The notes beneath the pieces are model-generated. The model saw only the letters and a program-made list of their open reading frames with translations. It did not search any database and was not told the origin of the DNA. Shown here in pieces: positions 1,275-22,522 of a stretch of DNA of 64,000 nt. The stretch spans positions 1 to 64,000 of the forward strand of contig CP075493.1 in NCBI GenBank assembly GCA_021613535.1, given 5' to 3'. This DNA is from Adineta vaga (Eukaryota > Animalia > Rotifera). The stretch's first letter is position 1; each line of letters starts with the position of its first letter. Made by a program: the position numbers and the translations under genes.

Positions 1275-4200
1275 CTGAAATGAAAAAAGTAGAATGTGAT
1301 TATGCGAATGTTTTTCAAATTATACTTGTTACCTGTAAGGATATTTAATGAATGCCAAGAATGATCATCTTTACTCAATTCGGTATTGAGAATCTGATGA
1401 ATAAGTTGTGCATGATCAGTGATGGTTGGATGTTGAAATAGGTCAGTGATAGAAATGGAATTTATTTCTAACCGAAATTCTACTTTATAGTGATGCAGAA
1501 GTTGCATAATAATTAATGAATGACCACCAATAGAGAATATGTTTGTATTAGTAGATATTTGATTTCGTTTCAATATATCACACCATATACGATGAATAAT
1601 AGATTCAATTTCATTTGTTGGTTCTAAGAATTCGATAGTATTGTTGAGTTTAGTTGAAGAGAGAGAAATAGAATCAGGTGATGGGAGAGATTTTCGATCA
1701 ATTTTTCCATTTTGATTTAGAGGTAATTTATCAAGAATAATAAAATGGGATGGAATCATATGTGGTGGAAGATGGGATTGACAATATTCACGTAATTCTT
1801 TTTCACTAACGACTGAACTTTGAACATAAGCGACTAAATGATCTTCACCCCATTTCACCACAACACAAGTAGATACCGATGTGATACTAAGTAAGCATCG
1901 TTCAATTTCACCAAGTTCAATTCTTTGTCCGTGTAATTTGACCTGAAAGTCTTTTCTTCCTTCATATCGAACAAGGTTATTCTGATCTATCTTGACAAGA
2001 TCACCAGTTCGATAAAATAAAATATCATCGACATAAATTATTGCTTTCGATGTTAAATCGTCACGTCCAAGATAACCAGCAAAGACGCCTACTCCTCCAA
2101 CAAGTAGCTCTCCTTCTTGATTTATTAATACACTTTGCAGGTATTGATCCAGAACTAAATTTCGATAGTTTGGAATTGGTCGACCTATAGGAATATTTTC
2201 ATTATCTATATGGTGTTCCAGTAGGTAAGTAGTGGCATCAATGGTTGCCTCCGCGGGGCCATATAAATTCCATATGTTGCACTTTGATATGCCGATATTT
2301 ACAATGGAACGCGTTAGTTTGCCATTGAATGGTTCTCCTGTTTAAATATAAAGTTAAGTCGGATAAGATATGCGAAAAGACAAGTATAGCAGAACAGTTA
2401 GCGATACGTCTGTAAATTTCTCTAACAGAATTACAGACTGTTTATAAATGGAAGTGACGTATATACTGTCGTATTGTCAAATTATGCGATCCGGTGAGTA
2501 TTTATCGATTCATTCTGAGTCGTACACCCAATTTTATTGTGACACCAGAGAAAAAATATTTACGATCAAAATATCGAATGAAAGAATTTGGACTGAAAAA
2601 TTCCGGCAATGAAACTATCAAAATGATCATGAAATCGAGAATATAATTATCGAAAACGGGAAGATCGAAAATTGGACGGTGTGGAGAAGTCGAATATGTA
2701 TTCTAGATTTGTCGAAAGTCAAAACTTCTACAGTGTACTAGTTTATAACTTTCGTATTAATCTTGCAGATGGATGTCGGGGATTGTGGAGACAGCTGAAC
2801 TGACTTCATCAACACTTCACAGTCTCTCCCAACACTCCCATTTCGCTCTTAACCTCGAAAATTCATGAGTTTTTCCTTTTTAAGTTGAAAATGAAATATT
2901 TCAAAGTAGTCTCTTGCACTTTACCAATGTTTCTTCCATTTCGACATTCAAGTTCTTAGACACTGTATGTTCCCATTATTAGCTATTCGACATTTTTTCT
3001 TTGCGACATTTTAACTTTCCACCCGAATCCTGATTAACCGTTTAACCGTTTACTATAACAATACGGCTACAGCTGTGACCAAATACTGACTCTACCGCTT
3101 TTCCTAATTACTTATTCACTAACTAACTCACCGCTGCTGCAAAGTGACCGAAGATATTTTACAAAATGGCCCGCGTTACATTTGTTGATGAAAGTGAAGA
3201 AGTGAAACAGCAAACTTGGAACAGTGTGCATGTATGTTATTTGTTTGTTGTATAGCACTTCGGACAAATAGTCAAAATCAATAGTTCCTCGTGGATGCAC
3301 CATAATTAATGTGGCACCCTTTGATAAAATACCAAGTATCTCTTGAACATGAATATCGAATGAACATCGTGCCATTTGTATAGCTGTATCACCTTCGTTG
3401 AATGAATTTATGAACGTCAAAGAATGCATACATTCATTGAAATTTCCATGACGAATTTGAGCCTATAGAGGAAAAGAGAAAGATTAATTCAACAACAAGA
3501 CACAAGCAACAACGAACCGCTTTTGGTACTCCAGTTGAACCACTAGTGAAAATAATGTATGCAATATTCTCTGGTGTTACTATCACGTTCGACAATTGAT
3601 CAAAGCCAGTATTATTTTGAATGTCATTATTAGTTAATATTAAATCAACATTCACTACGATATTTTCGTCATGTATCTTGTTCTTTGTTAACCAATGAGC
3701 AAGAACAAGATGACTATTAGTTTGCTCAACAAGTGTATGTAGACGATGTGGTGGATCTCGAGGTGATAATGGACAATATGCACCACCTACCATTTCAATT
3801 GCCATTATACCAATAACCTAAAATAAACAACAATTCGTCATTAATACCAAGAGACATTCTTCTCATTCATCTACTTACCATTGATATACTTCTCTCCACA
3901 CATTGACAAACAATATCACCAACTTTTACATCATATTTGTTCAGTAAAGTCAAAGATAATACTTGAACATAATATAACAGCTCACAATTTGTCAACGATT
4001 GTTCATCTAATTCTACAGCTAACTTTTGTGAATATATCATTGCTTTAGAAACAAACTCATGATGAATACATTTGACAGCAGGAGATGATATTTGTGTATT
4101 ATTCATTGATTGTACAAGTAATTGTTCATTGGGTAATATTAATGAGAATTCATAGAGTGGTTTCTTCGCTTGACTATGAATAGATGTTGACAACTGACAC

Positions 4201-7200
4201 AACATTGAATGAAATTGGTGTGAAATCTTATTCACAGTTTCTACATGAAACAGATCACGTGACGCATCAATTGTACATGAAAGTTGATTAAGATCCAAAG
4301 TATGATGAAAAGTGAGAATAAAATCAAATTTACTCATGATTTCATCTTCACTAATCTGAATCCAAAATGGTGCTGAACTTAATTCACTATCACCAAGCAT
4401 TATTTTATCTTGATCGTCATTTGTCATCGATGTTGTAAACTCGAATGATGTATGAAGAAATGCCGGATTTGATAGGTGAGGATGTTGTGCAAGAATACGT
4501 TGAAGTGGAAAATATGAATATTTCATACTATTTGTAATCAAGACTTGCATTTGTCGAGTGAATTGATGGAAAGATGAATGAGGATCAAGCTGACATCGAA
4601 GAGGAATAGCATTGACAAACATTCCAATTATTGATCTAAATTCATCTCGATAACGTCCATCTGTATTCATTCCAATGCATAGATCTTGTTCTCCATTGGT
4701 TAATTTGAATAAGAAGATGAAATAAGTCATGAGTGACATATATTCAAGTGATATGTTATTTGTCGATGCATATGTGAGAAAGTATTGTGAAAGATCTTGT
4801 CCAAAGTCAAACGAAATAGATGTTCCACGACCAGTTCGATGTTCACTTGCAAGACGATATCGATCATAGGGTAATGATAGAGGTTGATCGAGTGGACAAT
4901 CATAAAGAGTATTAGACCAATACATTTCTGCACCAGTCATTGACATTTGTTGTTCAATGACAGCATCTAAACAAGATAGATGATCAATGTTTTTTGAAAA
5001 GAGAAGAAACGAGAGAAAAATGTATATTTACAATCGATATAGCGTAGAGTACTGTTGTCTTGATCAATAGATAGATGACTTGTTGTATAGGCTTGATTGA
5101 GATCATGAAGAAAGATATTCATTGATCGAAAATCAAATAAAGCATGATGAAAATTAAAGATAAGTAGATCTTTATGAGAAAGAAGATCATTCGATGAGAT
5201 GATCTCCTTGTAATGTATAAGATGACATCGAAAAACAAGACCTTGAGCCAGATCAAAATATTGAGTATTTTTTCGTTCATCCTGCATTATATTGTTAAGT
5301 TGTTCATCTGTTTCATAGCTACTTTGAGTAAATGAGAACATTGTTTTGTTGTTGCGATGCTTTTGAGATGTAATTCGTTGGATGAGTTGATTGTTTTGTG
5401 TATCGAAGATGAGTGATGTATGAAGTGATGGATGTTTGTTAACAACAAGTCGAAGTGCATGATGAAGTTGTTTTATTGATAAAGTATGTTGTGCATGAAG
5501 ACGATAAACAAATGGTAGATTACTAATGAGTACTGCTTGTTGTTTGTTGAGGTCGATAGATCGTTTGTGATCAAGATAAAGACATGTTTGTGCAGATGAT
5601 GCTGGTCCTATGACATTTAGAAAGTAGTTTATTATCATGATTTGCAGAATAACAGTCAGTTGCTCTCTCATTATATGCTACTTACAGTACTTCTCCCTAA
5701 TAACGACACTAAAATGAAACTTTATTTTTGTTTTTATTCGCGTTCATCTATTTTACGACCGATTTCAAACAACTTTATATTTGGGGAATCTTTGGATGAC
5801 GCTCTTTCGAATGATATATTTCCGATCCATTTTCTCATATGTTTTCATGGAGATATCACCGGTCTACGATTGTGATGTCTTGGTGTCGTTATAACGTTCT
5901 ACTTCCGTAATAGAGACACTCAGCTATTTTTTTACCCTAATAACGACACATCCTTAATAAAAGTTGATAGATTCTTCAGCAACTATAACGAGGAGCAACA
6001 TGGTGATGAAAATCGGCTTATTGTCGTTATTAGGGTCCAAAAACTCTTCGAGAATCTCTAGAACGAAAAATAGCTAGAATTGCTACAACGGCCAAATCAG
6101 CTGACTGTCGTTATTAGGGAGAAAAAATAGTTCGGTGTCGTTATTAGGGTCACCTATTTTTTCCATTGATCCGAGATGATTTTTGTTGATATTAGGATTC
6201 TCATATGGCATGAGTCAATCGACCTGAACCGTTAGATATAGGTAGAACTTGAGACGCTCTTCAAAGTTGACTAAGGAATCTACCCTAAATTTCAGAGTAA
6301 AAATCGTCCAAAACACTTTTTTCTGAGAAGAATTCGCTTTTAGCATAAATTTTGCTTGATTGTCGTTATTACGGAAGTAGAACGTAATAACGACACCAAG
6401 ACATCACAATCGTAGACCGGTGATATCTCCATGAAAACATATGAGAAAATGGATCGGAAATATATCATTCGAAAGAGCGTCATCCAAAGATTCCCCAAAT
6501 ATAAAGTTGTTTGAAATCGGCCGTAAAATAGATGAACGCGAATAAAAACAAAATAAAGTTTCATTTTAGTGTCGTTATTAGGGAGAAGTACTGTAGTTCA
6601 TTTGATCAATGTACTAACTGCAGACGCATGTTAATTGTTTTCAATTTGACCAAACTCGATAAAACATTAGGGCTTTCTGTATGAGACTGTTAAAATTACT
6701 CAGAGGTTTGTAAAAATACAAACGATATCTGTGGAATATTGTCAGCAGCTAATATAGTTATGCTTCATGAGTATAAAATCACTCTGTAGAATCAAGGATT
6801 TCAACTTTGTTCATCACAGTTTATGTCGAACGGTTCACAGGAATACAATGATCATCATTGGAAGAAAGCAAAGAAAATTCTTTAGATTCTGCGCGAGGCA
6901 AGGAGCTTCAAAACGGGAAAATCGAAGTAAACATACTATCTTGAACTGTGTTTCTTAATGAATGCACGATGGAAGACAAAAAAAGACAATTTTCGTCTTT
7001 TGGTTTGTTTCTTTGCTAATTATTTGCGTTGAGTATACTGAGTGATGAGAGAAGGAAGAGCGGGCTGTATAGGCAATGCGTGTTGGGGCTCTAGAGTTTA
7101 TTGACAGGTTACTGACAGATCATTCGAGAAAGTGAGACGAGTTCGTTTTGACACTGACGTATCTCCAAGCAAAAATTTTTATAGTTAACGTCCTTTTAAC

Positions 7201-10200
7201 GTAGAGATATTGAGGCTGCGTAGTGTGCTCTGGGTATATTTGTATTTATTCAGTATCGGACTGGAATATAAATGTTTCAGATCTATTAGAAGCTCATTAT
7301 ATTTTCATTAGAAAGAACATTCAACTCCGCATCAACCCATACAAAAGCTGTTTTTTCTGAACGCACTACAATCAGAGATTGGACGAGTACAAATACAGCA
7401 AGTAAAAGTACAAATACTTTTTACTTAGGTTGTGTACTTAGTACAGGTACTAAGTACCATGTTGTACTAAGTACATGTACTAATGAGAGAAGATCTTCAA
7501 CAGTTCAATCGCTTTTGAGTTGATTTTTCGGCTATAGGTTGAGAGGTGGGTATCACGAGTCCAGAATAATTTTAGAAAGATTTGAGCCGCTAGGCCTTTG
7601 GGATCGAGTTATGAGGTTTTTAGTGCATTTTTGACTATTTATTCAATATTGATGGAAAAGTCAAATAACGGAGTTTTGATCTGAAATTTTGTCCTTAGAT
7701 GGGTCTATTCATCATCAAAATATTATGAAATTTTCAGCTGAAAAAATGTTCCTTGGTCGAGGTACTGGGTTACTAAAACATAATCATTTATCGCCGATTA
7801 AACGCAAAATTCAAGTTTACTTGAAAATCCAATATCTCGACCAAGGAACATTTTTCAGCTGAAAATTTCAGATCAAAACTCCGTTATTTGACTTTTCCAT
7901 CAATATTGAATAAATAGTCAAAAATGCACTAAAAACCTCATAACTCGATCCCAAAGGCCTAGCGGCTCAAATCTTTCTAAAATTATTCTGGACTCGTGAT
8001 ACCCACCTCTCAACCTATAGCCGAAAAATCAACTCAAAAGCGATTGAACTGTTGAAGATCTTCTCTCATTAGTACATGTACTTAGTACAACATGGTACTT
8101 AGTACCTGTACTAAGTACACAACCTAAGTAAAAAGTATATGTACTTGTAATGCATAAATGTACTATTTACTGAGGTTTTTTAAGTACAAAGTACGAAAAG
8201 TACCAAGTTCTGTACTACGTATCCAATCACTGACTACAATAGGGTTATCAGAGGATACGAAGTTTATAGAGCAAGACTACTCTTCATGATATCTAACACC
8301 GATTAGATCTTTTTTCGATCATTTGTCCGTGCGAATCATTCGAATTTACTAGATTGATTCATCTGTTTTTGCTCATTTTCTTTAGCTACGTGTATTCCTA
8401 TAAGACTGCAGTAAAGTTTTATTTTTATGTGGTTGGATAGTGCATTGACTATTCTGTCGAACTATATAGTTTTAATTTGATTGGCTTCTTATTTTGGTCA
8501 AAAAATTCATAAATTTCTGAAATTATTGAGAAATTATTTTTGTAAGCTGATATTTGATTTAAAGTAAAACCGACTGTTTCGAAAATAGTATTAAAGTAAA
8601 GATATTGCTGAAACTGAAAGTTAGGGAAACTATCTTCTAAAACGGTCCTGAATTTGAATAGAAAATCAAATTTTACTGTTGAAGTTTTCAACATTTTTGA
8701 ATCATCATGTATTTTGGTCCTTTATAATCAATACAAAAGAAAAACTGAATCAATGTATATATTTCTCGAATTTGAGCGAGAATATGCATTTTTCCTCGGA
8801 AACCTAACTCTGCTTCGCCTCGTAGATAGCTCCAAAAATGAAACATTCAAAATCTGATTTTGCTGATTACTTAGTTGGTATATTGAATGCATATTTCATT
8901 TTGAAGGTCAAAAGTTTGCTTTTGTTCCAGCGAAAGTGATATTTTCAATGGGTTTCATTGATGGACACATCCTCTAAGAGAAGCAGAGTGAAATTTAGTG
9001 GAAAAATAAAAGTTCTTGGTAGGGCCCAGTGGAAGTGCGATTTTTGTTCCGATCCGATCATGTTTCGGCGGAAGGAACCCGCCCGGACCTCGATCCGCTT
9101 TCTAAAAGGGAAACCCTTTCTAACTCCGTCTACTACCATTTTTTCTAAATTTTCAGGCAACGATTTTCCAGCACATGTATCGCATTAAACAGTATTCGAT
9201 ACAATTCCGCTAGTGTTATGATTTGTCAGTGGAAAGCTCATATCAAAACTTGTATACTAAAGTTCGAATTTGATTCAGTTAGATGCCATATCAGATTAAT
9301 CTGGGAAATATGAGAGGATGGGTGTGGGTGGGGGTAGATGTGAGTGTGAGTGAGGGCGTGAGTGTGAGTGAGGGCGTAAGTGTGAGTGTGATTGTGGGCG
9401 ATTTCTCAATGTAAGGCACACCACACCCACACCCACCCACGCTTACACCAAGCGAATACTACCAAAATCAACATGTATGTACATACCTTCATTAACAACG
9501 TCTGATTGTCGAGAAAATACAATATTTTTCATTTCTTCGGTTTCATTTGGTAGAATAAGATCGATTTTCGCAATAGGTGTCAGGCATGTATCAATCTGGC
9601 TAGTAATCGAATTTGATGAAAAAAGATGCTGAACAAGATATTGTAGTCGACGAGCCATCGTCTCAACTGTTGTCTCATCAAATCGATCGCGTGAGCAGAC
9701 AAAACGACATGACAATGGAGCATCATCTGATGTTGAATTGTAAATGAATGTTAGCTTAAAATCAAACTTAGCCATTTCACGAGATTGTTTCATTGTTACT
9801 TGTCCCAAATGTACACCATTGAAAGCCAAATGATCGATGTCTGAAGATACAGTTATAAAATCAAACATTATATCAAGAAATGAAGCATTCGATTGATTGA
9901 CATGAAAGTCAGCGAGAATATGCTGTAATGGATAATGAGAGTGCTCAAGAATTGATAAACGGTTTTCTTGAACATGTTTAACAAGTTCATCAAATGAACA
10001 ATGTGGATTAAGCTGGAGACGATACGGCAACGTGGAAACAAACATTCCAATCATATTCTGCAACTCACTTCGATATCGATTAGCATCGAGACACGAAATA
10101 CATAAATCAGTTCGACCATAAGTCAATTGGAATAGAAATGTGTAAAATATAGCTAATCCTGAAAGGAATGGTGTAACTTGATGTGACGATGCGTAATCGA

Positions 10201-13200
10201 GAAATAATCTTGAAATCTCTTTCTCCAATGAGATTTCAGCAATAGAAGCTAAACCTGATCGTCGCTCAGTAGATAAACGATGTCGATCAACTGGCAATAG
10301 TAATGACCGTTTGAGATTATATCCTTTCAGCTGCGAGTGCCAAAACTTACGAGATGATGTCATATCTATTAGACGTTCATGAACAGCATAATCAATATAA
10401 TCCAATGACGCTTCAACTGTCGACATTAGTGTATTATTGTTATAAGCAACGCATAGTTCTTTACAAAAGATTTCAGCAGATAACCAATCACATGCTGAAT
10501 GATGAAAAGCGATTATGAGAATATCTGATTTGACGATTAACTGACTATCTCGATTTTGACTGCCTAACTTTTGTTGTCGTAATACTTCACAATGGAAAAC
10601 ACGACCACTCGACAAATCAAACAAACTAGGATTGACTGCCATTTCATTAATAATATCGAAAAGTTCAGAGTCATTTTTATAATTTCGGTGGTCAACCAAT
10701 AGCGATCTTTGATGATTGTTAGTAATGTGTTGTTTTAAAGTATTGCCATTGTAGTCATAAATCAACGATGTTCGTAATATCTTGTGTTTACTTAAAAGAG
10801 ATTGAAGCGCACGTGACAGACGATCAACTGATAATGAACCTTGAACAATTCGTAGAGCACTTAGTTCATTATAGATACCGACTTTCCTTGAAAAGCGAAC
10901 TTCTTCATCAACAAAGATGCGCTCTTGACCGAATGACGCAGTGCCTAAACGTTTCACAAAACAAAATTTCATCATCGAAGAGAAATCTATTCCAAAATAG
11001 CTCACCTTCACTCAAATATAATTTTCTCCATTGTTTCTTTTCTTTGTTATATACAACAACTGTCTGAAGCAGTTTCGCGTGTTCAGCCACAGTATTGTAT
11101 TGAAAAAATGAGCGCATTGATAAAACTTCATTGTCAAAATTAAAAAGCGCTTGATATTCTCGATATAAATAAATGAGTAAAAGAGAATTACCCCCCGCAC
11201 TAAAGAAGCTAGTAGCAGCTGATATGCGAGGAAATAGTTCTGTATCTAATTGCCACAATTCCGAAGAGCAAATACCAGTCGAAGATATTTCATTGCAAGC
11301 GATCCCCGTCGCCTGCTTCGATCCGTCTGACTTCGACTGAATATAATACGCACCAGGTCGGTTTGTATTCAACAAACCACGCCAAATGTCCGCAATTGTC
11401 TTTTCTAGTTCAGTAGTTGGTGCTATATATGTATCTTCTTTCTGAAGATCGAATGTCGATATTTCTGGTAAAGATTTCCGATCGATTTTCCCATTTGGAC
11501 TCAATGGAAATGTTGAAAGAGTCATAAAATATGATGGTATCATATAACTTGGGAGATTTTCTCTTAAGTATGTCCTGAGTGTGTCAATATAATCTGGTGT
11601 CGATTTCACAGTCGAAATAGCTCGTTCATATTTTTGTTCATCACGAATCTTTCCCATGAACATTATATGCAATAACATGTTCCCTTTGTTCGATCCACAA
11701 TAAGTGAGTATGTTATCTAATGTCTTATTAATTTTCACTGGTAAATTTGTACGAGTACCAATTGGACACATACCAATATTCATTTCTAAACCACCATCCA
11801 TTAATAAATGCGATGTCATACCAGCTTGTAATCCGTGCTCAGATTGTCCAATATAGAAGATTGCGCATTGACAATCATTGAAAATAATTTTAGTATCGTC
11901 ATGATCACCCAAAAATAGTGGAACATCTTCTTTTATTACATCTAATTCTATATCGAAAGAGATAAGAGTACTATCTTTTTTGTCATAGATAAACCATTGA
12001 TCTTTGTTATAGTCAACAGATTTCAGATAAACAATATATTGAAGATAGTCACTATCATTAGCAATGTCTTGTTGAACAGATGAAATTGTAAAACAATGAT
12101 GAGTATCGTTCTCATCTAAGTTGATAATATGTCCATCTATCTCTTCATTATGCATAAATCTTGAAAATATGAATCCCAATTTAGATGCTTCTTGTTGAAG
12201 TAATCCCATCATATATCCTGTTTCAATTATACAAAATTGACAACCTAATGTTTTCCCATATAGAGGTGCAATGGCTGATGATCGTCCAACAAGATGTAAT
12301 CTTATACCAAGATTCTCATCATGAACACAATTATCGATTAATTCGAGAGTATGTGTGTCCGGATTATGATAATAGATACCAGGAGAAATATCATCTATTG
12401 ATGTATGAAGCTCAATATATACTTGAACAGGATAAAGACTTCCTGCTGATGCATAGCGATATTTTGGCAAGGGATGATTGTAAATATTAATTGGTGTCAA
12501 TATCGATAATAACTGACTAAGATTATCGAAATTGAAGCTTTGCAGAAATCTTTGGTTGACATTTTTCTTGGTCAGACAACATTTGTTCAACAAATGTTCA
12601 ATAGTAGACTTTTCAATGATTTCATTTGTAAACTGTCGATAACTTTTTCTTGCATAATATGTATTAATGAATGTTTCTGTTAGTTTTGGTTTCGTGAGTG
12701 CATAGCTCTTTTTGACTTCATAGTCGTGTTGTATTCCATGTCTAGCAAGTTTAAAATTAGTACGTTCAATAGGATCCGTAATTGAAATTTCTGCTTCATT
12801 ATAATCATCATTAATGACAGAATGTTTTTCTGGCATAATATATCCAATCAAGTATTGTGATGACTTATCAACAGTAACAATTGCTTGATGAATGTCAGAA
12901 TGTTGTTGTAGATGGTATTCGATTTCACCAAGTTCAATACGATGACCATGAATTTTGACTTGAAAATCTTTTCGTCCGATGAACTCAATGTATCCATCTG
13001 GATGAAATCGACCATAATCACCTGTTCGATAAAGACGCTGACCATTCTGTGGATGAATAATAAAACTTGATCGTGTTTTCTCTTCGTCGTTCCAGTAACC
13101 ATCAGCAACACCTATGCCACCAATGTATAGCTCACCATCAACCCATTCAGGACAATCATCAAGATTTGTATCATAAACATAATATTGTTGATTTCTTAAG

Positions 13201-16200
13201 GGCATTCCATAAGGAATTGATTTCCATTCTTGCGGTATTTCTTTTGGTAAAGTAAAAGCAATTGACCAAATCGATGCTTCGGTTGCACCACCTAGACTAG
13301 TTATTGTTACTTCTTCACCAAATATTGTTTGTATTGATTTTGGTAAAGATAATGGTATCCAATCACCACTTAATAAAACATGCCGTAATTGATTATAATT
13401 AGAAGTATGTTGTAAATGTTCAACTAACATTTGCATCAACATTGGAACACTATTCCAAATGGTAACATGATGTTGAACCATCATATCATACCAATGTTGA
13501 GGATTTCTATAATGTTCATGATCTGGAATAACAATAGTTCCACCAGCGATTAACATTCCAAATATATCATAAACAGATAAATCAAAATTTAGATGAGACA
13601 ATGCAAATATTCGATCATTTGAAGTGAGATTTAACCTAGTATTGATATCAAGAATAGTATTGAGAACAGCTTGATGACTAATCATAACACCTTTTGGTTT
13701 TCCAGTTGAACCAGATGTATAAATCACGTATGCCAAATCAGTCAACTGTTGTTGTCGTATTGGAAAGGGCTTTGGATAGTCGTCAAATGTGAATGTATCA
13801 ACTGGAATAGTTACCAAATGTGGAATTGCGTGATGACAATGAGATTGTGTTAGGATAATTTTTACATTCGTTTCTTCAATTAGTGCACAAAGTCGATCCT
13901 GTGGAGAATCAATATCCAATGGTAAATATGCAGCACCTGCAACCAAGATAGCTAAACAAGCAACAACTTGTTCCCAACCTTTTCTCATGAGAATAGCAAT
14001 GAGTTGGTTTGGTTGTCCTCCTTGTTGCTGTAAATGATAAGCCAATGAATAAACACGATTCATTAGTTGTTTATATGTTAAAGATTCAGTGGATGAAAGA
14101 ATAGCCCAAGCGTCAGGTGTTTGATAAGCTTGGTCTGCGATCAGTGAACGAATTCGGGGAAGCTCGATGTTCAAAGGGTGATTGGTTTGATTGAAAAGCA
14201 GTCGTCGTTCTTGATGATCAATTGGAAGAACAGAGGTAAGAGGCTGCAGCCAAGTATGATCTAATGTTGCTAAGTCGACTATGATGTTAATAAAAACGTT
14301 ATGCATATCGTTTATCAGGCCGGAAGGAAATAGAGCATCTATATAATCCCATTCAATCACTAAGTGGCCCATATCATCTTCATAAACTCGATTGTCTAGG
14401 TACACTTGAGGTGTTTGTGATACAGCATATGTTGGTTCGTCGGGGAAAATAGTTTGAATACCAGAACTAGAAGTTCGTCGGATGCCATCTTTTACATCGA
14501 TTCCACAGGTGAATACTATCGGGAAAAGAATTTGTCGACTAGCGCGTATATGCATGACTTTATTGATAAATGTGACAGTACTATACAACACATGATCAAG
14601 ATCTTCCCAAAGCTGCATTTGAACCGTTCGAATTTGATCGATGATAGCAATTGGCGTTCCAGTTTCAGTGTTGATCTCGAGTAAAATGATTGACGTAAAA
14701 TCACCCAGTATGTTATTAATATGGTGATGAATTGGTAATCGGTTGAAAAACGGCATATTGAGTGTGAAGTGATGGTTTTTACTCCACTTACTCAATACAA
14801 GTGCAAAAATAGTTGCTAAAAAGCCAGCAGAAGATATTTCATACTGTCGTATTTTAAGCTTTAACTTGTGCCACGTTTGGTCATCTAGTGTCCCTGAGAT
14901 ACGGACAAATTGTTGACTTTCTATATCATTTGGCAGACTTTTCAGTGGAAGATCTGGTCCAGAAGGAAACGACGAGAGACGACTTAGCCAATATTCTTCG
15001 TCATTTCTGTATGCAGACGTGTTTTGAATTTCTTTTTCTGCTAGAACATAGTCACGAAATGATAACGTTGGCGTTGGCAAAGTAATACTTTCATTTTCAT
15101 AAAGAAATAGTAGTTCTTGCCACATTATATTGTAGCTAAACCAATCAAAAATGAGGATATCGAAACCAAGATGCAACCTGAAGTCACGGTCAGTCCATTG
15201 CGTGATCTGAATGTCAAATAATGGCCATTTACTAGCAGGTAAAATTTGATGAGATAATAATCGTCGTCGTCTCTCTAGCTCCTCATATATATCCACTACA
15301 GGCTGCTTCCTGATATCAATAATAGGAATTTTATAGTATGGTACGTGTTCGAGAATTTGCTGTTCACTCTCTGACGGAAACACAAGTCTTAATGCTTCAT
15401 GGCGCTGAATCAAACGATTGAATGTTCGTTCAAAACGCTCAATATCAATTGGAGGAGAATCATATTCAACATAGCCGAAACCAGATACATCGCTTAGTTG
15501 GATGAAACCACTGCGCCCGATCAGATACATTTGCTGAATGTCTCGCAACGGAAAAGGTTTATACCGATGCATTTCGTCGGTTGTCACGCTAATCGCTACT
15601 TTGTCTATGTTCGAATGACTTTGTTTTATTCGCTCATTTTTGCACCGGTACACTAGAGAACTTAGCACTGGGTTTCTATAAAATATATGTAACGGTAAAT
15701 TAATCTTTAAGATTTGCTCAATTTGAGATTTTAGACGAATAACGAATAAAGAATTGCCACCAAGTTCGAAAAAATTGTCCGTCAAGCTTATTCGATCTCT
15801 ATCGAATAATACTTGCCAAATGTCCGCAATTGTCTTTTCTAGTTCAGTAGTTGGTGCTATATATGTATCTTCTTTCTGAAGATCGAATGTCGATATTTCT
15901 GGTAAAGATTTCCGATCGATTTTCCCATTTGGACTCAATGGAAATGTTGAAAGAGTCATAAAATATGATGGTATCATATAACTTGGGAGATTTTCTCTTA
16001 AGTATGTCCTGAGTGTGTCAATATAATCTGGTGTCGATTTCACAGTCGAAATAGCTCGTTCATATTTTTGTTCATCACGAATCTTTCCCATGAACATTAT
16101 ATGCAATAACATGTTCCCTTTGTTCGATCCACAATAAGTGAGTATGTTATCTAATGTCTTATTAATTTTCACTGGTAAATTTGTACGAGTACCAATTGGA

Positions 16201-19200
16201 CACATACCAATATTCATTTCTAAACCACCATCCATTAATAAATGCGATGTCATACCAGCTTGTAATCCGTGCTCAGATTGTCCAATATAGAAGATTGCGC
16301 ATTGACAATCATTGAAAATAATTTTAGTATCGTCATGATCACCCAAAAATAGTGGAACATCTTCTTTTATTACATCTAATTCTATATCGAAAGAGATAAG
16401 AGTACTATCTTTTTTGTCATAGATAAACCATTGATCTTTGTTATAGTCAACAGATTTCAGATAAACAATATATTGAAGATAGTCACTATCATTAGCAATG
16501 TCTTGTTGAACAGATGAAATTGTAAAACAATGATGAGTATCGTTCTCATCTAAGTTGATAATATGTCCATCTATCTCTTCATTATGCATAAATCTTGAAA
16601 ATATGAATCCCAATTTAGATGCTTCTTGTTGAAGTAATCCCATCATATATCCTGTTTCAATTATACAAAATTGACAACCTAATGTTTTCCCATATAGAGG
16701 TGCAATGGCTGATGATCGTCCAACAAGATGTAATCTTATACCAAGATTCTCATCATGAACACAATTATCGATTAATTCGAGAGTATGTGTGTCCGGATTA
16801 TGATAATAGATACCAGGAGAAATATCATCTATTGATGTATGAAGCTCAATATATACTTGAACAGGATAAAGACTTCCTGCTGATGCATAGCGATATTTTG
16901 GCAAGGGATGATTGTAAATATTAATTGGTGTCAATATCGATAATAACTGACTAAGATTATCGAAATTGAAGCTTTGCAGAAATCTTTGGTTGACATTTTT
17001 CTTGGTCAGACAACATTTGTTCAACAAATGTTCAATAGTAGACTTTTCAATGATTTCGTTTGTAAACTGTCGATAACTTTTTCTTGCATAATATGTATTA
17101 ATGAATGTTTCTGTTAGTTTTGGTTTCGTGAGTGCATAGCTCTTTTTGACTTCATGGTCGTGTTGTATTCCGTGTCTAGCAAGTTTAAAATTAGTGCGGT
17201 CAATAGGATCAGTAATTAATATATTTGATTGATCAAAATCATCATTAGATATAAAATATTTCTCTGGCATAATATATCCAATCAAGTATTGTGATGACTT
17301 ATCAACAGTAACAATAGCTTGATGAATGTCAGAATGTTGTTGTAGATGGTATTCGATTTCACCAAGTTCAATACGATGACCATGAATTTTGACTTGAAAA
17401 TCTTTTCGTCCGATGAACTCAATGTATCCATCTGGATGAAATCGACCATAATCACCTGTTCGATAAAGACGCTGACCATTCTGTGGATGAATAATAAAAC
17501 TTGATCGTGTTTTCTCTTCGTCGTTCCAGTAACCATCAGCAACACCTATGCCACCAATGTATAGCTCACCATCAACCCATTCAGGACAATCATCAAGATT
17601 TGTATCATAAACATAATATTGTTGATTTCTTAAGGGCATTCCATAAGGAATTGATTTCCATTCTTGCGGTATTTCTTTTGGTAAAGTAAAAGCAATTGAC
17701 CAAATCGATGCTTCGGTTGCACCACCTAGACTAGTTATTGTTACTTCTTCACCAAATATTGTTTGTATTGATTTTGGTAAAGATAATGGTATCCAATCAC
17801 CACTTAATAAAACATGCCGTAATTGATTATAATTAGAAGTATGTTGTAAATGTTCAACTAACATTTGCATCAACATTGGAACACTATTCCAAATGGTAAC
17901 ATGATGTTGAACCATCATATCATACCAATGTTGAGGATTTCTATAATGTTCATGATCTGGAATAACAATAGTTCCACCAGCGATTAACATTCCAAATATA
18001 TCATAAACAGATAAATCAAAATTTAGATGAGACAATGCAAATATTCGATCATTTGAAGTGAGATTTAACCTAGTATTGATATCAAGAATAGTATTGAGAA
18101 CAGCTTGATGACTAATCATAACACCTTTTGGTTTTCCAGTTGAACCAGATGTATAAATCACGTATGCCAAATCAGTCAACTGTTGTTGTCGTATTGGAAA
18201 GGGCTTTGGATAATCGTCAAATGTGAATGTATCAACTGGAATAGTTACCAAATGTGGAATTGCGTGATGACAATGAGATTGTGTTAGGATAATTTTTACG
18301 TTCGTTTCTTCAATTAGTGCACAAAGTCGATCCTGTGGAGAATCAATATCCAATGGTAAATATGCAGCACCTGCAACCAAGATAGCTAAACAAGCAACAA
18401 CTTGTTCCCAACCTTTTCTCATGAGAATAGCAATGAGTTGGTTTGGTTGTCCTCCTTGTTGCTGTAAATGATAAGCCAATGAATAAACACGATTCATCAA
18501 TTGTTCAAAGGTTAAGCTCCCGTGTGGTGAGAGAATGGCCCACGCGTTAGGGGACCGTTCAGCCTGTTCAATAATCATTTTATGAAGTAAATCGCTTGAA
18601 AATTTTGGTTTCCACATAGTTTCGTTAAAAGAATAGCGTCTTTGTGTTTGATCTAGTGGTAGCGAAGTAAAACTTATCTTATGCCATGATTCATCGAATA
18701 GTGCTAATTCATAAAGAAAATCAGTGTATACCTGTAACATATTTTCGATCATTCCTGGTGGAAACAAATCTTCTACATAGTCCCAAATAATGATTAACTC
18801 TCCTTTTTGTTCATAAACTTGATTATCGAGATATACTTGTGGTGTTTGGGATATGCTGTACACAGTAGATATTTGATTGTCAAACATATCATCGCCATTA
18901 GTCGGGCTGTAGTTTTGAATATCAATGCCACATGTAAAAACGATTGGTAAGACAACAGATCTTGTATTAGTATGTCGCATCAAGTCTCGAATATATGATA
19001 CCCCACTATAGGATCGGTGGTCTGAGTCTTCCCATAACTGGTTTTGAACAGTACGAACAAATTGGCTAAAAACTATCGGTTTATTCAAATTTATTTCTAG
19101 TGCGGTAAGTGAAGTGCAGTCTCCTGCTATATAATTAACTTGTGAATGCATAGGCAATCGATTGAAAATCGGCAAGTTCAAAGAGAAGTGTTTATTTTCA

Positions 19201-22200
19201 CTCCATTTAGATAAAATAATTGCATATACTGATGCCAGACAGCCGGCTGATGATAAATGAAGATCAACAACGCGCTGCTTCAACTTTTGCCAAACTAACA
19301 TCTCTACTTTTCGTTTCAAACGAGTAAATCGTTGCTCTTTTAAGTCATTTGGCCAACATCGTAACGGCAACTGTGGACCTAGTGGAAACGAAGCTAGACG
19401 ATTGATCCAATACATTTCATCTTTTTTGTACACCGACATATTCTTTATTTGATTTTCGGCCATAATATAATCTCGATAAGAGAGATTCAGTGGTGTTAAA
19501 TTAGTGTTTGGATTGCTATAAAGTTCACTTAATTCCTTGAATATCAAATGCAAACTCCATAGATCGAGAATGAGAAGATCGAAACCAACATGTAGACGAC
19601 AACGGTCTTCGCCATCAGCGATAAAACGAGTTAGCTGAATATCAAATAGTGGCCATTGATCAGCCGGTCGCACTTGATGTGATAGTTGTTTACGCCGTTC
19701 TAAAAGTTGTTCTTCTGCATATTCGACTTTGCGTAGATCGATAACAGCAAGATTATATGGAGGAACATGTTCGAGAGTCTGTTGCTCCATTTCGGATGGG
19801 AAAATAATTCGTAACGTATCGTGACGTTGAATTAGCATGTTGATTGCTTCTTCAAATCGTTTAACATCAAATGCTGGCGAGCAATCGTATTCTTGATATG
19901 AGAAGCAAGATACTTGACCAAGTTCGACATATGCACTTCGTCCGAATAAATAAGCTTGTTGAATTTCTGTCGTAGAGAAGGGTCGATATCTCGCCGAAGG
20001 ATCGTTTTTAAGCAATCCAGATAATACGAATCGATTATCCCGATATTGCTCCTCTGCTAAATATTTCTTACAATGTGCTACTAACATTGATATTATTGGA
20101 TTTTCGTAGAAGATTTGAATAGGTAAATTTATGTTTAAACTGTCTGTGATTTTTGATTTTATTTGATTGACATATATAGAATGTGCTCCAAGTAAAAAGA
20201 TATTATCATTTAAACCAATGTGTGCTACGTTAAGTGAAGCTCGACAAATTTCCATAATGTGCATTTCTAATTGACTATCAGGTGGTACATAGTCTTTGAT
20301 TTCTGATTTGATCATTGTCAGCGTTTTCCTATCCACTTTTCCATTAGACCCGATCGGAAATTGTTCTAAGACGATGAATGCAGACGGCACCATATACGAT
20401 CGAAGACGTGCATGACAGTGCTCTCTCAATTTTATCTCATCCATATGCAGCATTGACGACTGAATATACGCAACCAAATATTCGAATGAGTTTTGTTCAT
20501 TGGTGATTTTAGTGACGATGCAATTTGAAATTGAATTAGAGTAACTGAGTATTGTTTTTTCGATCTCTCCGGCTTCAATGCGTTGTCCACTCAACTTTAT
20601 TTGGAAATCTGCACGTCCAGCATGTACCAACTGGCCTTGCACATTGTATCGAGCAAGATCACCTGTCTTGAAAAATTCTTCGTTATTTATTGTCACTCGA
20701 CTGTTGCGAGTTAATTCAGCATTATTGTAATAACATTGGAAGAGAGCAGCACCTAGAAATGAATTGAAACTATATTTGATGAGAGAAGGTCACCAACTTT
20801 AAAATGCCTTTTGAGCTGATATTTGGCGCATCAGCAGATACTAGTGTGCCTAGGAAAAGCCTAAAAGCATTACGGCTAATGGCGTTTTCTCTTCGAGTTA
20901 TGGTCAATTTACTGAAAGTTTACCCTATACATTGATATAGGAATGAAAATCGCGTGATCATGGTTTGGCCTGATTTTTTGTTCATAGATAGTACCAAGTG
21001 TAGATATCATACCCTGAAAATTCCAGATCAATCGGACTCTTCATTCACGAGACAAAAAGTTTTTTTATAAAATGAAGGACTTTTTAAATCGTTTGTATAA
21101 TACGAGCACCTTTTTGAAACTTTTTTTTTCGTGAATGAAGAGTCCGATTGATCTGGAATTTTCAGGGGATGATATCTACACGTGGTACTATCTATGAACA
21201 AAAAATCAGGCCAAACCATGATCACGCGATTTTCATTCTATATCAATGTATAGGATAAACTTTCAGTAAATTCACTCCTCAAATGCTTTTCTCCTAACAG
21301 ATAAATTTCGCCAATTTCGTTTAGACTTGACGGTGAAATTATTTGTCCGTCGGCTTCTTTGACTAGGAGACACCGATAATCGGCTAGTGGATAACCGATG
21401 GGCAATGCCTCTGAACTTACAAGTTCATCAGCATTTTGTTTGATTTCACAGCCAATAGCAGTATTGGTTTCACTCATACCAAACGCAATAAAAAGACGAA
21501 TTTGTGATGCGAAAAACTTTACTTTAGCCAGATATCGTGAGTCCGAGGTCTCGCCTGCTGTCCACAAGATGCGTACTTGTCCAAGTGTTTCTTTTGGTTT
21601 GCTGTTACGAGCTTCGAGATAGTTTATAAAGACTTTAAGCAACGATGAGCCGATAAGAAGAACCGTAGCTTGTTTGTCTTTGATAATAGAGGCCAGACGA
21701 TCCATGTTTAAGTTATCACCTGGACGTAGGAGTACTAAAGTGCTGGAGGGAAACACGCTTAGCGACATAAAGATTTCATAGATATGAATAATCCATGATG
21801 AGGCAGTTAATTGAAGAACCTTCTCGCCATGTTCTACCTTCCAATTGATTAGAGTTCGAATACTTTCTGCCAGACTTCGATGTGTGTGCACAATTGCTTT
21901 AGGTACACCTGTTGTGCCCGATGTACAAATGATGAAACTTTGACTCCTACTCTTGATAAAGATCTCTAAATAATGTATGCTTCATTGCGAAAATGCATTC
22001 GTGCAAGAACAAAAATGTTACCTTTCTGATCAATATCTTCTGTCATAAGACTCATCGATAAAATATTGCTAAGATCGATAAGCTGAATTCCTTGACTGTC
22101 GATGCTGACAAACCTCTGACGCGTATTTCCATGTACCAGAACGATTTCGCCTTGAACATTGTCAAGCACCGAACGAATCCGAATGGAAGAATCAGCCAGA

Positions 22201-22451
22201 CTGAGTGGACAATAGACACCACCAGCACACATGATTCCCAATAAGCCGCATACCATCTCTAAGCTGCGATCGATATATTGACAAACAATTTGGCCGATTT
22301 CAATTTGAAGATGATGAGCGACGTAAGTCACACTTGCCAATAGTTCACTGTATGTCAACGTTTGATCCTCGAGCTCGATTGCTATTTGCTGAGGAGAAGT
22401 GTATGCGACGTCGAAGAACATTTCAAGAACGTTTTTTGATGATGAAAACAT
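1..22451 (-). CDS. Giant multi-exon nonribosomal peptide synthetase, A-T-Cy-A(Ox)-T-Cy-A(Ox)-T-C-C-A-T-C..., 3' end outside the window
   Basis: Exons read manually: 22451-22022, 21965-21294 (or -21276), 20752-11006, 10944-9487, 5607-5032, 4966-3879, 3817-3518, 3462-3132, 2337-1333, 1274-<1. All junction phases are consistent (1,1,1,1,1,0,0,1,1). Splicing rebuilds split motifs such as TSGTTGVPKA, LRYID|YAVIEQQM, ERSISM|VIGIMAI, PKA|AQIRH and CSSG|EPF. About 16.9 kb of CDS; no in-frame stop seen. Confidence 0.93.
1333..3817 (-). CDS. NRPS exons 7-9: adenylation domain A4 (Ser-like code) and T domain
   Basis: AYIIFTSGSTGVPKA, FDIHVQE, WNLYGPAE, YRTGDL, GRKDFQVKLHGQRIELGEIE, NGKIDRK, IGGHSL. Introns at 3463-3517 and 2338-3131. 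Region 2337-1862 translated manually, no stop. Confidence 0.9.
3879..5607 (-). CDS. NRPS exons 5-6: second tandem condensation domain (HHALFDF) and start of A4
   Basis: KHPSLHT, FHHALFDF, IIGMFVNAIPLR, MSKFDF. 65-nt intron at 4967-5031. Confidence 0.9.
5683..6595. mobile_element. Tc1/mariner/pogo-type MITE in an NRPS intron
   Basis: TA|CAGTACTTCTCCCTAATAACGACAC...GTGTCGTTATTAGGGAGAAGTACTG|TA, with inverted arms of about 225 bp and repeated TAATAACGAC motifs. Confidence 0.9.
7373..8232. mobile_element. hAT-type MITE/foldback in an NRPS intron
   Basis: 8-bp TSD ACTACAAT (7365-7372 and 8233-8240), termini CAGAGATTGGA...TCCAATCACTG, near-perfect internal inverted repeat at about 7420-8135. Confidence 0.92.
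9320..9441. repeat. GT/CA-rich simple repeat with inverted ends next to an NRPS donor site
   Basis: GGGTGTGGGTG...(GTGAGT)n...CACCCACACCCACCCAC. Confidence 0.6.
9487..10944 (-). CDS. NRPS exon 4: condensation domain (HHSACDW)
   Basis: ASFGQER, KHKILRT, FHHSACDW, YIDYAVHE, NMIGMFVSTLPYR, AKFDF. Bounded by phase-1 introns 10945-11005 and 5608-9486. Confidence 0.9.
11006..20752 (-). CDS. NRPS exon 3 (9747 nt): end of A1, T1, then two Cy-A(Cys)-Ox-T thiazole-forming modules
   Basis: ORF 10908..20696. T motifs GAHS, GGNS, GGNS. Cy motifs IQQAYLFGR/IQQMYLIGR, DLLILDLWS/DILIFDWFS (DxxxxDxxS), FNRLP, GDCTS/GDFTS, PIVFT, SQTPQVYLD. A domains FDLSVYD/TIWNSVP/LLSGDW/SLGGATEASIWS give code DLYNLSLIWK (Cys). 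Ox motif KYRYASAGSLYPVQ is inserted between A8 and A9. Confidence 0.95.
11381..18497. repeat. Near-identical 2683-bp direct repeat (11381-14063 and 15815-18497) covering the A(Cys)-Ox domains
   Basis: Constant 4434-bp offset. Only scattered SNPs apart from one divergent patch at about 12720-12830 versus 17154-17264. Confidence 0.97.
20906..21272. mobile_element. Foldback/MITE in NRPS intron 2
   Basis: Inverted arms of about 155 bp (20906-21060 versus 21118-21272). Confidence 0.85.
21294..22451 (-). CDS. NRPS exons 1-2: starter adenylation domain (N-terminal core), atypical specificity pocket
   Basis: Motifs LTYSEL, AGGVYCPL, FIICTSGTTGVPKAIVHTH, WTAGE, FGMSET, PIGYPL, GEIYLLG. 56-nt GT-AG intron at 21966-22021. 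No upstream C domain. Confidence 0.88.
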
Positions 22452-22522
22452 CGTAAAAGCGAGTTTAAAATCTACAAATATATGCAAATCTAAAGTATTA
22501 CGTTATAACTATATGATAGGAA

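What the first reader, a model, noticed from the sequence alone, without database searches (positions are those of the whole stretch)
11006..20752. Two tandem Cy-A(Cys)-Ox-T modules: a bithiazole assembly line in an intron-containing gene
Both modules have intact DxxxxD and SQTPQV Cy motifs, the canonical Cys code DLYNLSLIWK, and an FMN oxidase (RKSYRQF, KYRYASAGSLYPVQ) embedded between A8 and A9 as in EpoB/MtaD. Heterocyclisation and oxidation modules are bacterial hallmarks and are very unusual in a eukaryote, especially an animal.
Basis: partly seen in the sequence, partly recalled or inferred. Interest (0 to 1): 0.88.

Follow-up and report, generated by a model that had tools for sequence, protein, structure and literature searches.

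The report
Rotifer gene with two thiazole-forming modules
The bdelloid rotifer Adineta vaga carries, at the tip of chromosome 1, a spliced peptide-synthetase gene of bacterial ancestry with two consecutive modules that should each turn a cysteine into a thiazole ring; the domains are real and look intact, but they belong to an already published rotifer gene family and neither transcript nor product has been shown.

Summary
Confirmed. Window 11006-20752 (minus strand) is one stop-free exon. It encodes T-Cy-A(Cys)-Ox-T-Cy-A(Cys)-Ox-T, with DxxxxD and SQTPQV in both Cy domains and the code DLYNLSLIWK in both A domains. A roughly 450-aa FMN-oxidase insert lies between A8 and A9.

The host is Adineta vaga and the window is the first 64 kb of chromosome 1. 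The exon lies between GT-AG introns, and DNA runs from six studies hold it. Contamination is excluded.

It is not a recent graft. All 31 bdelloid homologues examined (four species) carry Cy-A-Ox, and they form one clade apart from all sampled bacteria. The best bacterial Ox is 27-39% identical. A. steineri has the same double module.

Both oxidases here keep the FMN motifs and the presumed catalytic Tyr, which some paralogues have lost. The two A-Ox units are 98.7% identical in DNA, which points to recent gene conversion.

The gene probably continues (C-C-A-T-C...) past a 3.9 kb transposon-laden intron and off the assembly's end.

Bdelloid NRPSs are published. Nowell et al. 2024 already mark 'heterocyclization' and 'AMP_binding-cys' at these coordinates in a supplement, without discussing thiazoles or the oxidase. 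This scan also followed up a paralogue 16.8 Mb away (s1-494308).

Splicing is unproven and transcription is barely seen. Verdict: new member of a known kind, moderate interest.

The parts
21965..22451 (-). Exon 1 (start codon 22451-22449, ends at 22022), intron 1 (21966-22021, GT..AG) and the first base of exon 2 (21965). This is the N-terminal part of the starter A domain.
   Evidence: Sequence read. Pfam AMP-binding on both ORF pieces. Annotated model P0001 residues 144-357 map to 21966-21325.
20753..21326 (-). Intron 2, which holds a palindromic MITE-like insert. The annotated donor (GT at 21326) skips the A6 motif GEIYLLG. The donor expected from homology (about 21291) reads GA.
   Evidence: An independent DNA contig (X2 record 12, 19642-20812) crosses the intron/exon boundary.
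11006..20752 (-). The large exon: end of starter A, T0, Cy1, A1(Cys) with Ox1, T1, Cy2, A2(Cys) with Ox2, T2.
18657..20009 (-). Cy1 heterocyclization domain (DLLILD, GDCTS, SQTPQV).
   Evidence: Best solved match is the EpoB Cy domain at E 5.6e-82, then Irp2, BmdB, HMWP2 and PchE.
17337..18599 (-). A1 adenylation core (A1-A8), code DLYNLSLIWK (Cys).
   Evidence: Nowell 2024 supplement marks 'AMP_binding-cys' at 17310-18512.
16002..17309 (-). Ox1, an FMN-dependent thiazoline oxidase inserted between A8 and A9 (RKSYRQF, PKYRYASAGSLYP, APLYGK).
   Evidence: BmdC E 5e-8 and TIGR03605 E 1e-12. Model pTM 0.82. Foldseek hits to 3EO7, BmdC, ThcOx and McbC. Motifs checked.
15627..15845 (-). T1 carrier domain (LGGNS).
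   Evidence: Pfam PP-binding at frame residues 1622-1682.
14217..15590 (-). Cy2 heterocyclization domain (DILIFD, GDFTS, SQTPQV). It is 50% identical to Cy1.
   Evidence: It groups with the second Cy of A. steineri P0002. Marked 'heterocyclization' in the Nowell 2024 supplement at 14667-15563.
11371..14081 (-). A2(Cys) with Ox2 (Ox2 = 11568-12875). This unit is 98.7% identical in DNA to 15805-18515.
11052..11411 (-). T2 carrier domain (AGGNS). It has a 45-aa insert (11219-11353) bounded by GT..AG.
10945..11005 (-). Intron 3, 61 nt, GTGAGC...TTTAG.
9487..10944 (-). Exon 4: a condensation domain (C1 motif SFGQERIF, active site HHSACDW).
   Evidence: Pfam Condensation E 5.5e-46.
5608..9486 (-). 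Probable intron 4 (GTATGT...CATAG), 3.9 kb, filled with foldback elements and (TGTGGG)-like tracts. The annotated gene stops here at 9443-9445.
   Evidence: Six paralogous proteins were checked. Five are exactly colinear across the gap and the sixth, P0002, to within about 10 residues. Splice sites; repeats.
1..5607 (-). Continuation (second C, A, T, next C), which runs off the start of the assembled chromosome.
   Evidence: tblastn with bdelloid paralogues; Pfam.

Best explanation
This is a genuine chromosomal gene of the bdelloid rotifer Adineta vaga. It is annotated as I4U23_000002 and lies in the subtelomere of chromosome 1. It belongs to the rotifer's old, much-duplicated family of NRPS genes of bacterial ancestry.

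Shown here: the domain order is A(starter, no Asp235)-T-Cy-A(Cys)-Ox-T-Cy-A(Cys)-Ox-T-C, and every core motif checked is intact.

Inferred mechanism:
1. A host phosphopantetheinyl transferase primes the carrier domains.
2. The starter A domain loads a carboxylic acid that is not an alpha-amino acid.
3. Each A(Cys) domain loads cysteine.
4. Each Cy domain joins the growing acyl chain to that cysteine and cyclodehydrates it to a thiazoline.
5. The FMN oxidase embedded in the same A domain oxidises the thiazoline to a thiazole while it is still tethered.
6. After two rounds the chain carries a 2,4'-bithiazole-4-carbonyl thioester.
7. The C domain passes it on, most likely to further modules (C-A-T-C...) encoded beyond a 3.9 kb transposon-filled intron.

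The two A-Ox units were recently homogenised by gene conversion. The two Cy domains are old and keep their positions.
For: Host and locus:
- A 100% identical protein is named Adineta vaga I4U23_000002.
- The window is C1:1-64000.
- G+C is an even 31-41% across the window.
- A Helitron lies in the window.
- GT-AG introns flank the exon.
- DNA runs from six studies, 2013-2022, hold the stretch, and one contig crosses the exon/intron boundary.

Domains:
- Pfam; solved Cy domains and BmdB are the top matches.
- Cys code, with an internal control.
- Ox is homologous to BmdC and SagB and folds like them.
- RKSYRQF, KY..ASAGSLYP and the Tyr aligned with BmdC's catalytic Tyr are all kept (PMC8795117).
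- The terminal C domain has HHxxxD.
- Two PPTase loci exist in the genome.

Family:
- All 31 bdelloid homologues examined carry Cy-A-Ox.
- The bdelloid Ox and Cy domains each form one clade with support 100.
- There are four diverged paralogous loci in this genome.
- A. steineri P0002 has the same tandem arrangement, with Cy1 closest to Cy1 and Cy2 closest to Cy2.

Continuation:
- Five of six paralogues checked are exactly colinear across 9485/5608, and P0002 to within about 10 residues. Splice sites there are canonical.
Against: - No RNA evidence for any splice junction. The only possible RNA signal is four short contigs inside the exon (depth 2-4) and one in exon 1. Five RNA-labelled runs of the species hold almost none of it.
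- The annotated donor of intron 2 deletes the A6 motif of the starter A domain, and the donor expected from homology is not GT.
- Intron 4 would be 3.9 kb in a gene whose other introns seen here are about 55-570 nt.
- The 3' end of the gene lies outside the assembly.
- T2 carries a 45-aa insert.
- Ox scores below NCBIfam's curated cut-off for TIGR03605 (47.5 against 78.4 bits).
- No product is known.
Confidence: 0.7

Rival explanations
1. The gene is a decaying or silent copy. The modules are intact only because they were recently overwritten by gene conversion, and no full-length synthetase is made.
For: - Next to no RNA signal.
- Defective or ambiguous donor in intron 2.
- Transposon-laden 3.9 kb gap after exon 4, with an in-frame stop just past the donor.
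- A sister copy of the A-Ox unit on chromosome 5 lacks Cy and has a frameshift.
- The location is subtelomeric and fast-changing.
Against: - 9.7 kb without a stop.
- The unique, unconverted parts (Cy1, Cy2, T domains, C) also keep all their motifs.
- Bdelloid NRPS genes are reported as nearly silent until fungal attack (PMC11258130), so low RNA is expected.
Confidence: 0.2
2. The modules work but do not give a bithiazole. One or both oxidases may be inactive (thiazoline product), or a module may be skipped.
For: The Ox here is a long two-lobed form that has not been studied biochemically.
Against: Both Ox copies here keep every motif shared with the bacterial long-type oxidases and with BmdC.
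Confidence: 0.1
4. The exon is bacterial contamination or a misassembly.
For: Domain types that are otherwise bacterial; a 2.7 kb internal repeat that short reads cannot span.
Against: - Spliceosomal introns on both sides.
- Host-like composition.
- The stretch is present in six independent studies, and a contig crosses the boundary.
- Depth of the repeat is about 3 times that of the unique part, which fits the three assembled copies.
- The same tandem layout occurs in A. steineri.
Confidence: 0.01

Closest known systems
Bacillamide synthetase BmdB with oxidase BmdC (Thermoactinomyces vulgaris by my recollection; PDB 7LY4/7LY7)
   Same: It is the best solved match of the whole module (E 1e-205). 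Its order is A-T-Cy-A(Cys)-T-C. The oxidase is homologous and acts on the tethered thiazoline (PMC8795117).
   Different: BmdB has one Cy module, not two. BmdC is a separate dimeric RREL-Ox protein. Here Ox is embedded in the A domain and is two-lobed. BmdB's last C domain releases the chain onto free tryptamine, whereas here the line probably continues.
EpoB (epothilone), Cy-A-Ox-T
   Same: Its Cy domain is the best solved match of Cy1. Its Ox also sits between A8 and A9 (PMC8795117), and its A domain is Cys-specific.
   Different: EpoB is a single module in a bacterial PKS-NRPS hybrid. Its Ox insert is smaller. About half of the A8-A9 spacings measured in bacterial hits were roughly 320-370 aa (the rest were about 410-525), against about 474 aa here.
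Bleomycin BlmIV/BlmIII and myxothiazol MtaC/MtaD bithiazole modules (from memory and from the references of PMC8795117)
   Same: Two consecutive Cys-heterocyclising modules plus FMN oxidase give a 2,4'-bithiazole.
   Different: These are bacterial. In bleomycin one Ox, placed after the PCP, serves both rings. Here each module has its own Ox inside its A domain. I made no sequence comparison with these proteins.
Indigoidine synthetase IndC/BpsA embedded Ox
   Same: A large Ox insert between A8 and A9, described as a pseudodimer (PMC8795117). The model here aligns over 465 columns to the 487-aa nitroreductase 3EO7 and shows two similar alpha/beta halves.
   Different: IndC oxidises a glutamine-derived ring, not a thiazoline, and has no Cy domain.
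Bdelloid rotifer NRPS/PKS family (Arkhipova 2013, PMC3846280; PMC10531068; Nowell 2024, PMC11258130)
   Same: Same organism and the same subtelomeric, intron-bearing, bacterial-derived multigene family. This locus is in the Nowell supplementary GFF.
   Different: Term searches of the three papers' main texts found no mention of thiazoles. 'Heterocyclization' was searched in two of them and 'oxidase' in two, also without result.

Membership tests
NRPS heterocyclization (Cy) domain | DxxxxD in place of the HHxxxDG of ordinary C domains | tested here: met
   DLLILD at 373 and DILIFD at 1846. The motif aligns with DLINVD of EpoB.
NRPS heterocyclization (Cy) domain | Closer to proven Cy domains than to C domains; Cy motifs GD(F/C)TS and SQTPQV present | tested here: met
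   The top solved matches are all Cy domains (EpoB, Irp2/HMWP2, BmdB, PchE). Motifs.
NRPS heterocyclization (Cy) domain | Catalyses condensation plus cyclodehydration | not testable with these tools
   Needs an enzyme assay.
Cysteine-activating A domain | Specificity code DLYNLSLIWK | tested here: met
   Read by hand from the LgrA alignment. At the eight correct code columns plus two adjacent ones (positions 330/331 were sampled one residue early, which gave DLYNLSLSIK), 31 of 32 bdelloid and 98 of 190 bacterial Cy-linked A domains are identical to this one. Only 4 of 103 bacterial A domains without a Cy are identical.
Cysteine-activating A domain | ATP-PPi exchange with L-Cys | not testable with these tools
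   Needs an enzyme assay.
NRPS-associated FMN oxidase (nitro-FMN reductase / SagB-McbC-BmdC family) | Sequence homology to proven azoline oxidases | tested here: inconclusive
   BmdC E 5e-8; Pfam Nitroreductase 27.4 bits (cut-off 23.5); TIGR03605 E 1e-12 but 47.5 bits against a curated cut-off of 78.4.
NRPS-associated FMN oxidase (nitro-FMN reductase / SagB-McbC-BmdC family) | Nitroreductase fold | tested here: met
   Model pTM 0.82. Foldseek probability 1.0 to 3EO7, BmdC, ThcOx and McbC.
NRPS-associated FMN oxidase (nitro-FMN reductase / SagB-McbC-BmdC family) | FMN-binding motifs and catalytic Tyr | tested here: met
   RKSYRQF, PKYRYASAGSLYP and APLYGK are kept. The Tyr aligns with the BmdC Tyr that I take to be Tyr260 (this assumes a numbering offset of 2).
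NRPS-associated FMN oxidase (nitro-FMN reductase / SagB-McbC-BmdC family) | Inserted between A8 and A9, as in EpoB and IndC | tested here: met
   A8 at 1096 and A9 at 1570 in the frame.
Bdelloid horizontally acquired NRPS family | Encoded in a bdelloid chromosome with spliceosomal introns | tested here: met
   The splice sites are inferred from sequence only.
Bdelloid horizontally acquired NRPS family | Groups with other bdelloid copies, and the nearest outgroups are bacterial | tested here: met
   Ox and Cy trees, bdelloid clade support 100. The sister bacterial lineage is not resolved.
Bdelloid horizontally acquired NRPS family | Transcribed and spliced | tested here: inconclusive
   Only a few short low-depth contigs in runs guessed to be RNA, and none across a junction.

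The most novel reading that the evidence does not exclude
A. vaga makes a bithiazole-containing natural product from its own nuclear genes. It would be an animal counterpart of the bacterial bithiazoles (the bleomycin tail; the antifungal myxothiazol and cystothiazole). The starter may be an aryl or phenylpropanoid acid supplied by the nearby PAL and acyl-CoA-ligase-like genes, and the product may be deployed as inducible chemical defence, for example against fungal pathogens. Each module uses a self-contained two-lobed (pseudodimeric) oxidase, which would let it work without dimerising.
Probability: 0.3. Interest if true: 0.8.

Novelty: new member of a known kind. Interest (0 to 1): 0.45.

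Why it matters
Thiazole and bithiazole rings are the pharmacophores of several important bacterial drugs. In the papers I could search, no animal-encoded pathway to them has been described.

Cy-A(Cys)-Ox modules turn out to be a standard building block of bdelloid NRPSs: all 31 homologues examined have one. This particular gene keeps two fully canonical copies in tandem. That gives natural-product chemists a concrete mass and UV signature to look for in rotifer extracts. It also gives those who study bdelloid horizontal gene transfer a clear case of an anciently acquired bacterial chemistry that was kept, duplicated and homogenised by gene conversion in an animal subtelomere. The long two-lobed embedded oxidase is also an unstudied variant of NRPS tailoring domains.

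The general phenomenon is published, however, and the locus is already catalogued.

Tried and rejected
- Contamination or misassembly: rejected (introns, composition, six independent DNA studies, paralogues in four species).
- Recent graft from bacteria: rejected by the trees and by identities.
- Terminal C domain as an amine-capturing release domain, as in BmdB C3: considered, then downgraded. Five of six paralogues checked are exactly colinear across the 3.9 kb gap into a second C domain (P0002 within about 10 residues), and the gap has canonical splice sites.
- First C-like domain as an epimerisation domain: rejected. It has the C1 motif SxxQxR and matches solved C domains.
- T2 insert as an intron: left open. 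It is bounded by GT..AG and splicing would give near-canonical spacing. But paralogues carry in-frame inserts of about 22-45 aa at the same place, which fits a real loop equally well.
- Donor lineage: not resolved. The nearest rows are unnamed metagenomic proteins and Legionellaceae or Pseudomonadota MAGs, with weak support.
- RNA evidence: the single reads call gave no splice junction.
- Specificity code of the downstream A domain: not obtained, because its exons are fragmentary.
- Rfam: only one tRNA in the window.
Exons were searched by reference, and the database's own model P0001 was used as returned.


Full report
**What is there**

The minus strand of the window carries a 3262-codon open frame at 10908-20696. 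An AG acceptor at 20754-20753 precedes base 20752. A GTGAGC donor at 11005-11004 follows base 11006, and that intron ends in TTTAG at 10945.

Pfam finds two Condensation, two AMP-binding, PP-binding and Nitroreductase matches. Motif positions are listed:
- DLLILD and DILIFD replace HHxxxDG in the two C-like domains.
- SQTPQV occurs twice.
- RKSYRQF and KYRYASAGSLYPVQ each occur twice.
- Both oxidase inserts lie between A8 (GRKDFQVK) and A9 (LPSYMIP), which are about 474 residues apart.

**Domain identity**

The whole module matches the bacillamide Cy-A-T module BmdB best among solved structures (E 1e-205). Cy1 alone matches the EpoB Cy domain best (E 5.6e-82), followed by Irp2/HMWP2, BmdB and PchE, all of them proven heterocyclization domains.

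I read the A-domain code from the alignment to LgrA, using GrsA numbering from memory. It is DLYNLSLIWK.

As an internal control I compared ten columns across 342 A domains from the hits. Eight columns are the correct code positions. Two were sampled one residue early at positions 330/331. Identical to this domain were:
- 31 of 32 bdelloid Cy-linked A domains;
- 98 of 190 bacterial Cy-linked A domains, with most of the rest one or two changes away;
- only 4 of 103 bacterial A domains without a Cy.

The insert matches the thiazoline oxidase BmdC (E 5e-8) and the SagB dehydrogenase model TIGR03605 (E 1e-12). The latter score is below NCBI's curated cut-off.

An AlphaFold model built on 32 sequences (pTM 0.82) gives Foldseek probability 1.0 to 3EO7, BmdC, ThcOx and McbC. 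Only the 487-aa nitroreductase 3EO7 aligns over nearly the whole insert (465 columns). The model also shows two similar alpha/beta halves. I therefore read the insert as a two-lobed, probably pseudodimeric, oxidase of the kind proposed for IndC (PMC8795117). It is not the shorter EpoB type.

The FMN motifs are kept in both copies. So is the Tyr (APLYGK) that aligns with the Tyr I take to be BmdC Tyr260.

**Host and reality of the locus**

A 100% identical protein is recorded as Adineta vaga I4U23_000002, 4085 aa, on an 18.1 Mb contig. The window is the first 64 kb of chromosome 1.

- G+C is an even 31-41% across the window.
- The window also holds a Helitron, an intron-bearing PAL gene and an acyl-CoA-ligase-like gene.
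- The stretch 17100-22600 is present in DNA runs from six studies between 2013 and 2022.
- An independent contig spans 19642-20812, across the exon/intron boundary.

Contamination is excluded.

**A family, not a one-off or a graft**

All 31 bdelloid hits (A. vaga, A. steineri, A. ricciae, Rotaria socialis and three unnamed) contain a DxxxxD Cy domain. All but one truncated protein also contain the long Ox.

The genome holds four further diverged Cy-A-Ox loci, with 51-59% amino-acid identity in Ox. It also holds a 99% identical A-Ox copy near the end of chromosome 5. That copy lacks a Cy domain and has a frameshift.

In an IQ-TREE quick tree of 124 Ox domains, the 32 bdelloid rows form one clade (SH-aLRT 100) on a long branch. 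The bacterial sister is unresolved: a Legionellaceae MAG, two Pseudomonadota MAGs and unnamed metagenomic proteins. A FastTree tree of 104 Cy domains gives the same picture.

Across one genome per bacterial species, the best Ox match is only 27-39% identical. The acquisition is therefore old. It predates the split of the Adineta and Rotaria sequences in the tree, unless bdelloids exchanged copies among themselves.

A. steineri P0002 has the same tandem Cy-A-Ox-T-Cy-A-Ox order. Its Cy1 is closest to Cy1 here and its Cy2 closest to Cy2 (54% and 58%, against 49% for the cross pairs). The double module is therefore older than the species split.

In P0002 the two A-Ox units are 61% identical. Here they are 98.7% identical in DNA over 2711 nt, with runs of 1243 and 896 nt that have no difference. 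This indicates recent gene conversion. Read depth over the repeat is about three times that of Cy1, which fits the three assembled copies (the tool warns that depth is not a copy number).

**Gene structure beyond the finding**

Upstream, exon 1 (ATG at 22451) and exon 2 encode the first part of a starter A domain. It has no Asp at position 235, so its substrate is not an alpha-amino acid. This agrees with note s1-482744.

Intron 2 contains a palindromic MITE-like insert. The annotated donor at 21326 removes the A6 motif GEIYLLG, and the donor expected from homology reads GA.

Downstream, exon 4 (9487-10944) is a C domain with HHSACDW. The annotated model stops at 9443. However:
- a GTATGT donor sits at 9486;
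- a CATAG acceptor sits at 5608;
- five of six A. steineri paralogues checked are exactly colinear across this 3.9 kb gap into a second C domain, and the sixth to within about 10 residues.

The gap holds foldback repeats and (TGTGGG)-like tracts. The line then continues A-T-C and runs off base 1 of the assembly. A C-C pair after Cy-A-Ox-T recurs in many bdelloid paralogues.

T2 carries a 45-aa insert (11219-11353) bounded by GT..AG. Paralogues have in-frame inserts of about 22-45 aa at the same place. Whether this is an intron or a loop remains open.

**Expression**

No run on record as RNA holds the stretch. One run guessed to be RNA gave four short 100% identical contigs inside the exon at depth 2-4. 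Another run gave one contig in exon 1. None crosses a junction.

Nowell et al. report that bdelloid NRP/PKS genes are barely expressed until fungal infection, and that only two A. vaga models are induced. Function is therefore inferred from intact sequence only.

**How it most likely works**

See Best explanation. The steps from priming onward are inferred from the well-established logic of Cy-A-Ox-T modules (EpoB, BmdB/BmdC; PMC8795117). Two ACPS-family transferase loci in the genome could do the priming.

**What is known already**

- The A. vaga NRPS family is described as having about 50 copies, bacterial origin and introns (PMC3846280).
- It was surveyed in PMC10531068.
- It was mapped to about 40 mostly subtelomeric clusters in PMC11258130.
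- Supplementary file 12 of that paper already lists 'heterocyclization' at Chrom_1:14667-15563 and 'AMP_binding-cys' at 12876-14078 and 17310-18512. These are exactly the domains discussed here.

Term searches of the three main texts found no mention of thiazoles. 'Heterocyclization' (two papers) and 'oxidase' (two papers) were also absent. A library search for rotifer + thiazol + NRPS found nothing relevant.

This scan had also followed up a paralogous module 16.8 Mb away (s1-494308) and reported that its oxidase had lost the Tyr. I see that loss in paralogues P0078 and P0068, but not in this gene.

**Verdict**

The finding is real and correctly read. It is a new member of a known kind. Its main added value is a specific, testable prediction of an animal-encoded bithiazole.

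I sent no joined spliced model of my own to any search tool. Exons were searched by reference.

Noticed in passing
window 20753-21326: Intron 2 holds a roughly 270-nt near-perfect palindrome (MITE-like, about 20960-21230). The annotated donor at 21326 deletes the A6 motif of the starter A domain, and the donor position expected from homology (about 21291) reads GA, not GT.
   Followed up: partly
window 5608-9486: A 3.9 kb probable intron contains two large foldback elements (arms 7403-7690/7862-8149 and 5726-5922/6357-6553). It also holds telomere-repeat-like tracts (GTGGGTGGGTGTGGG) at 9421-9445 and 9309-9333, just after the splice donor.
   Followed up: partly
window 11219-11353: The last carrier domain has a 45-aa, stop-free insert bounded by GT..AG. 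Paralogues in three species have in-frame inserts of about 22-45 aa at the same spot. It may be an unannotated in-frame intron or a variable loop.
   Followed up: partly
window 1-5607: The assembled chromosome starts inside an NRPS C domain. The downstream part of the assembly line (C-A-T-C...) is cut off by the end of the assembly, and no telomeric repeat is present at base 1.
   Followed up: partly
G000:C5:16907545-16910527 (loci L096, L010): A third, 99% identical copy of the A(Cys)-Ox unit lies about 20 kb from the end of chromosome 5. It has no Cy domain upstream and a frameshift inside Ox. Nearby DNA matches window 8278-9320 (about 89-90%) and 3684-5684 (79%), so the two subtelomeres are paralogous.
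   Followed up: partly
proteins P0078 (A. vaga), P0068 (A. ricciae) and several A. steineri paralogues: Some bdelloid Ox domains have Cys in place of the presumed catalytic Tyr (APLCGK). Others have YASIDDLYP or YASYESLYP in place of YASAGSLYP. This suggests that part of the family makes thiazolines, or has dead oxidases.
   Followed up: partly
bdelloid proteins: Two consecutive C-type domains (C-C), both with HHxxxD, follow Cy-A-Ox-T in many bdelloid NRPSs. The role of the doubled C domain is unexplained.
   Followed up: no
window 40445-41851 (-) and 52289-56673 (+): An acyl/aryl-CoA-ligase-like gene (best matches FadD, feruloyl-CoA and 4-coumarate-CoA ligases) and an intron-bearing aromatic amino-acid ammonia-lyase lie about 18-34 kb from the NRPS start. 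They could supply a phenylpropanoid starter for the non-amino-acid starter A domain.
   Followed up: partly
window 35031-38920 (-): Helitron-like element (Helitron_like_N plus PIF1 helicase), with its frame broken into three ORFs.
   Followed up: no
window 18921-19224: DNA runs from two studies hold a second version of this part of Cy1 with 30 differences in 304 nt. Its depth is lower in one run (14.8 against 44.4) and about equal in the other (62.9 against 69). It may be a diverged allele or an unassembled paralogue.
   Followed up: no
window 31120-31192 (-): One tRNA gene (Rfam RF00005, 52.5 bits).
   Followed up: no
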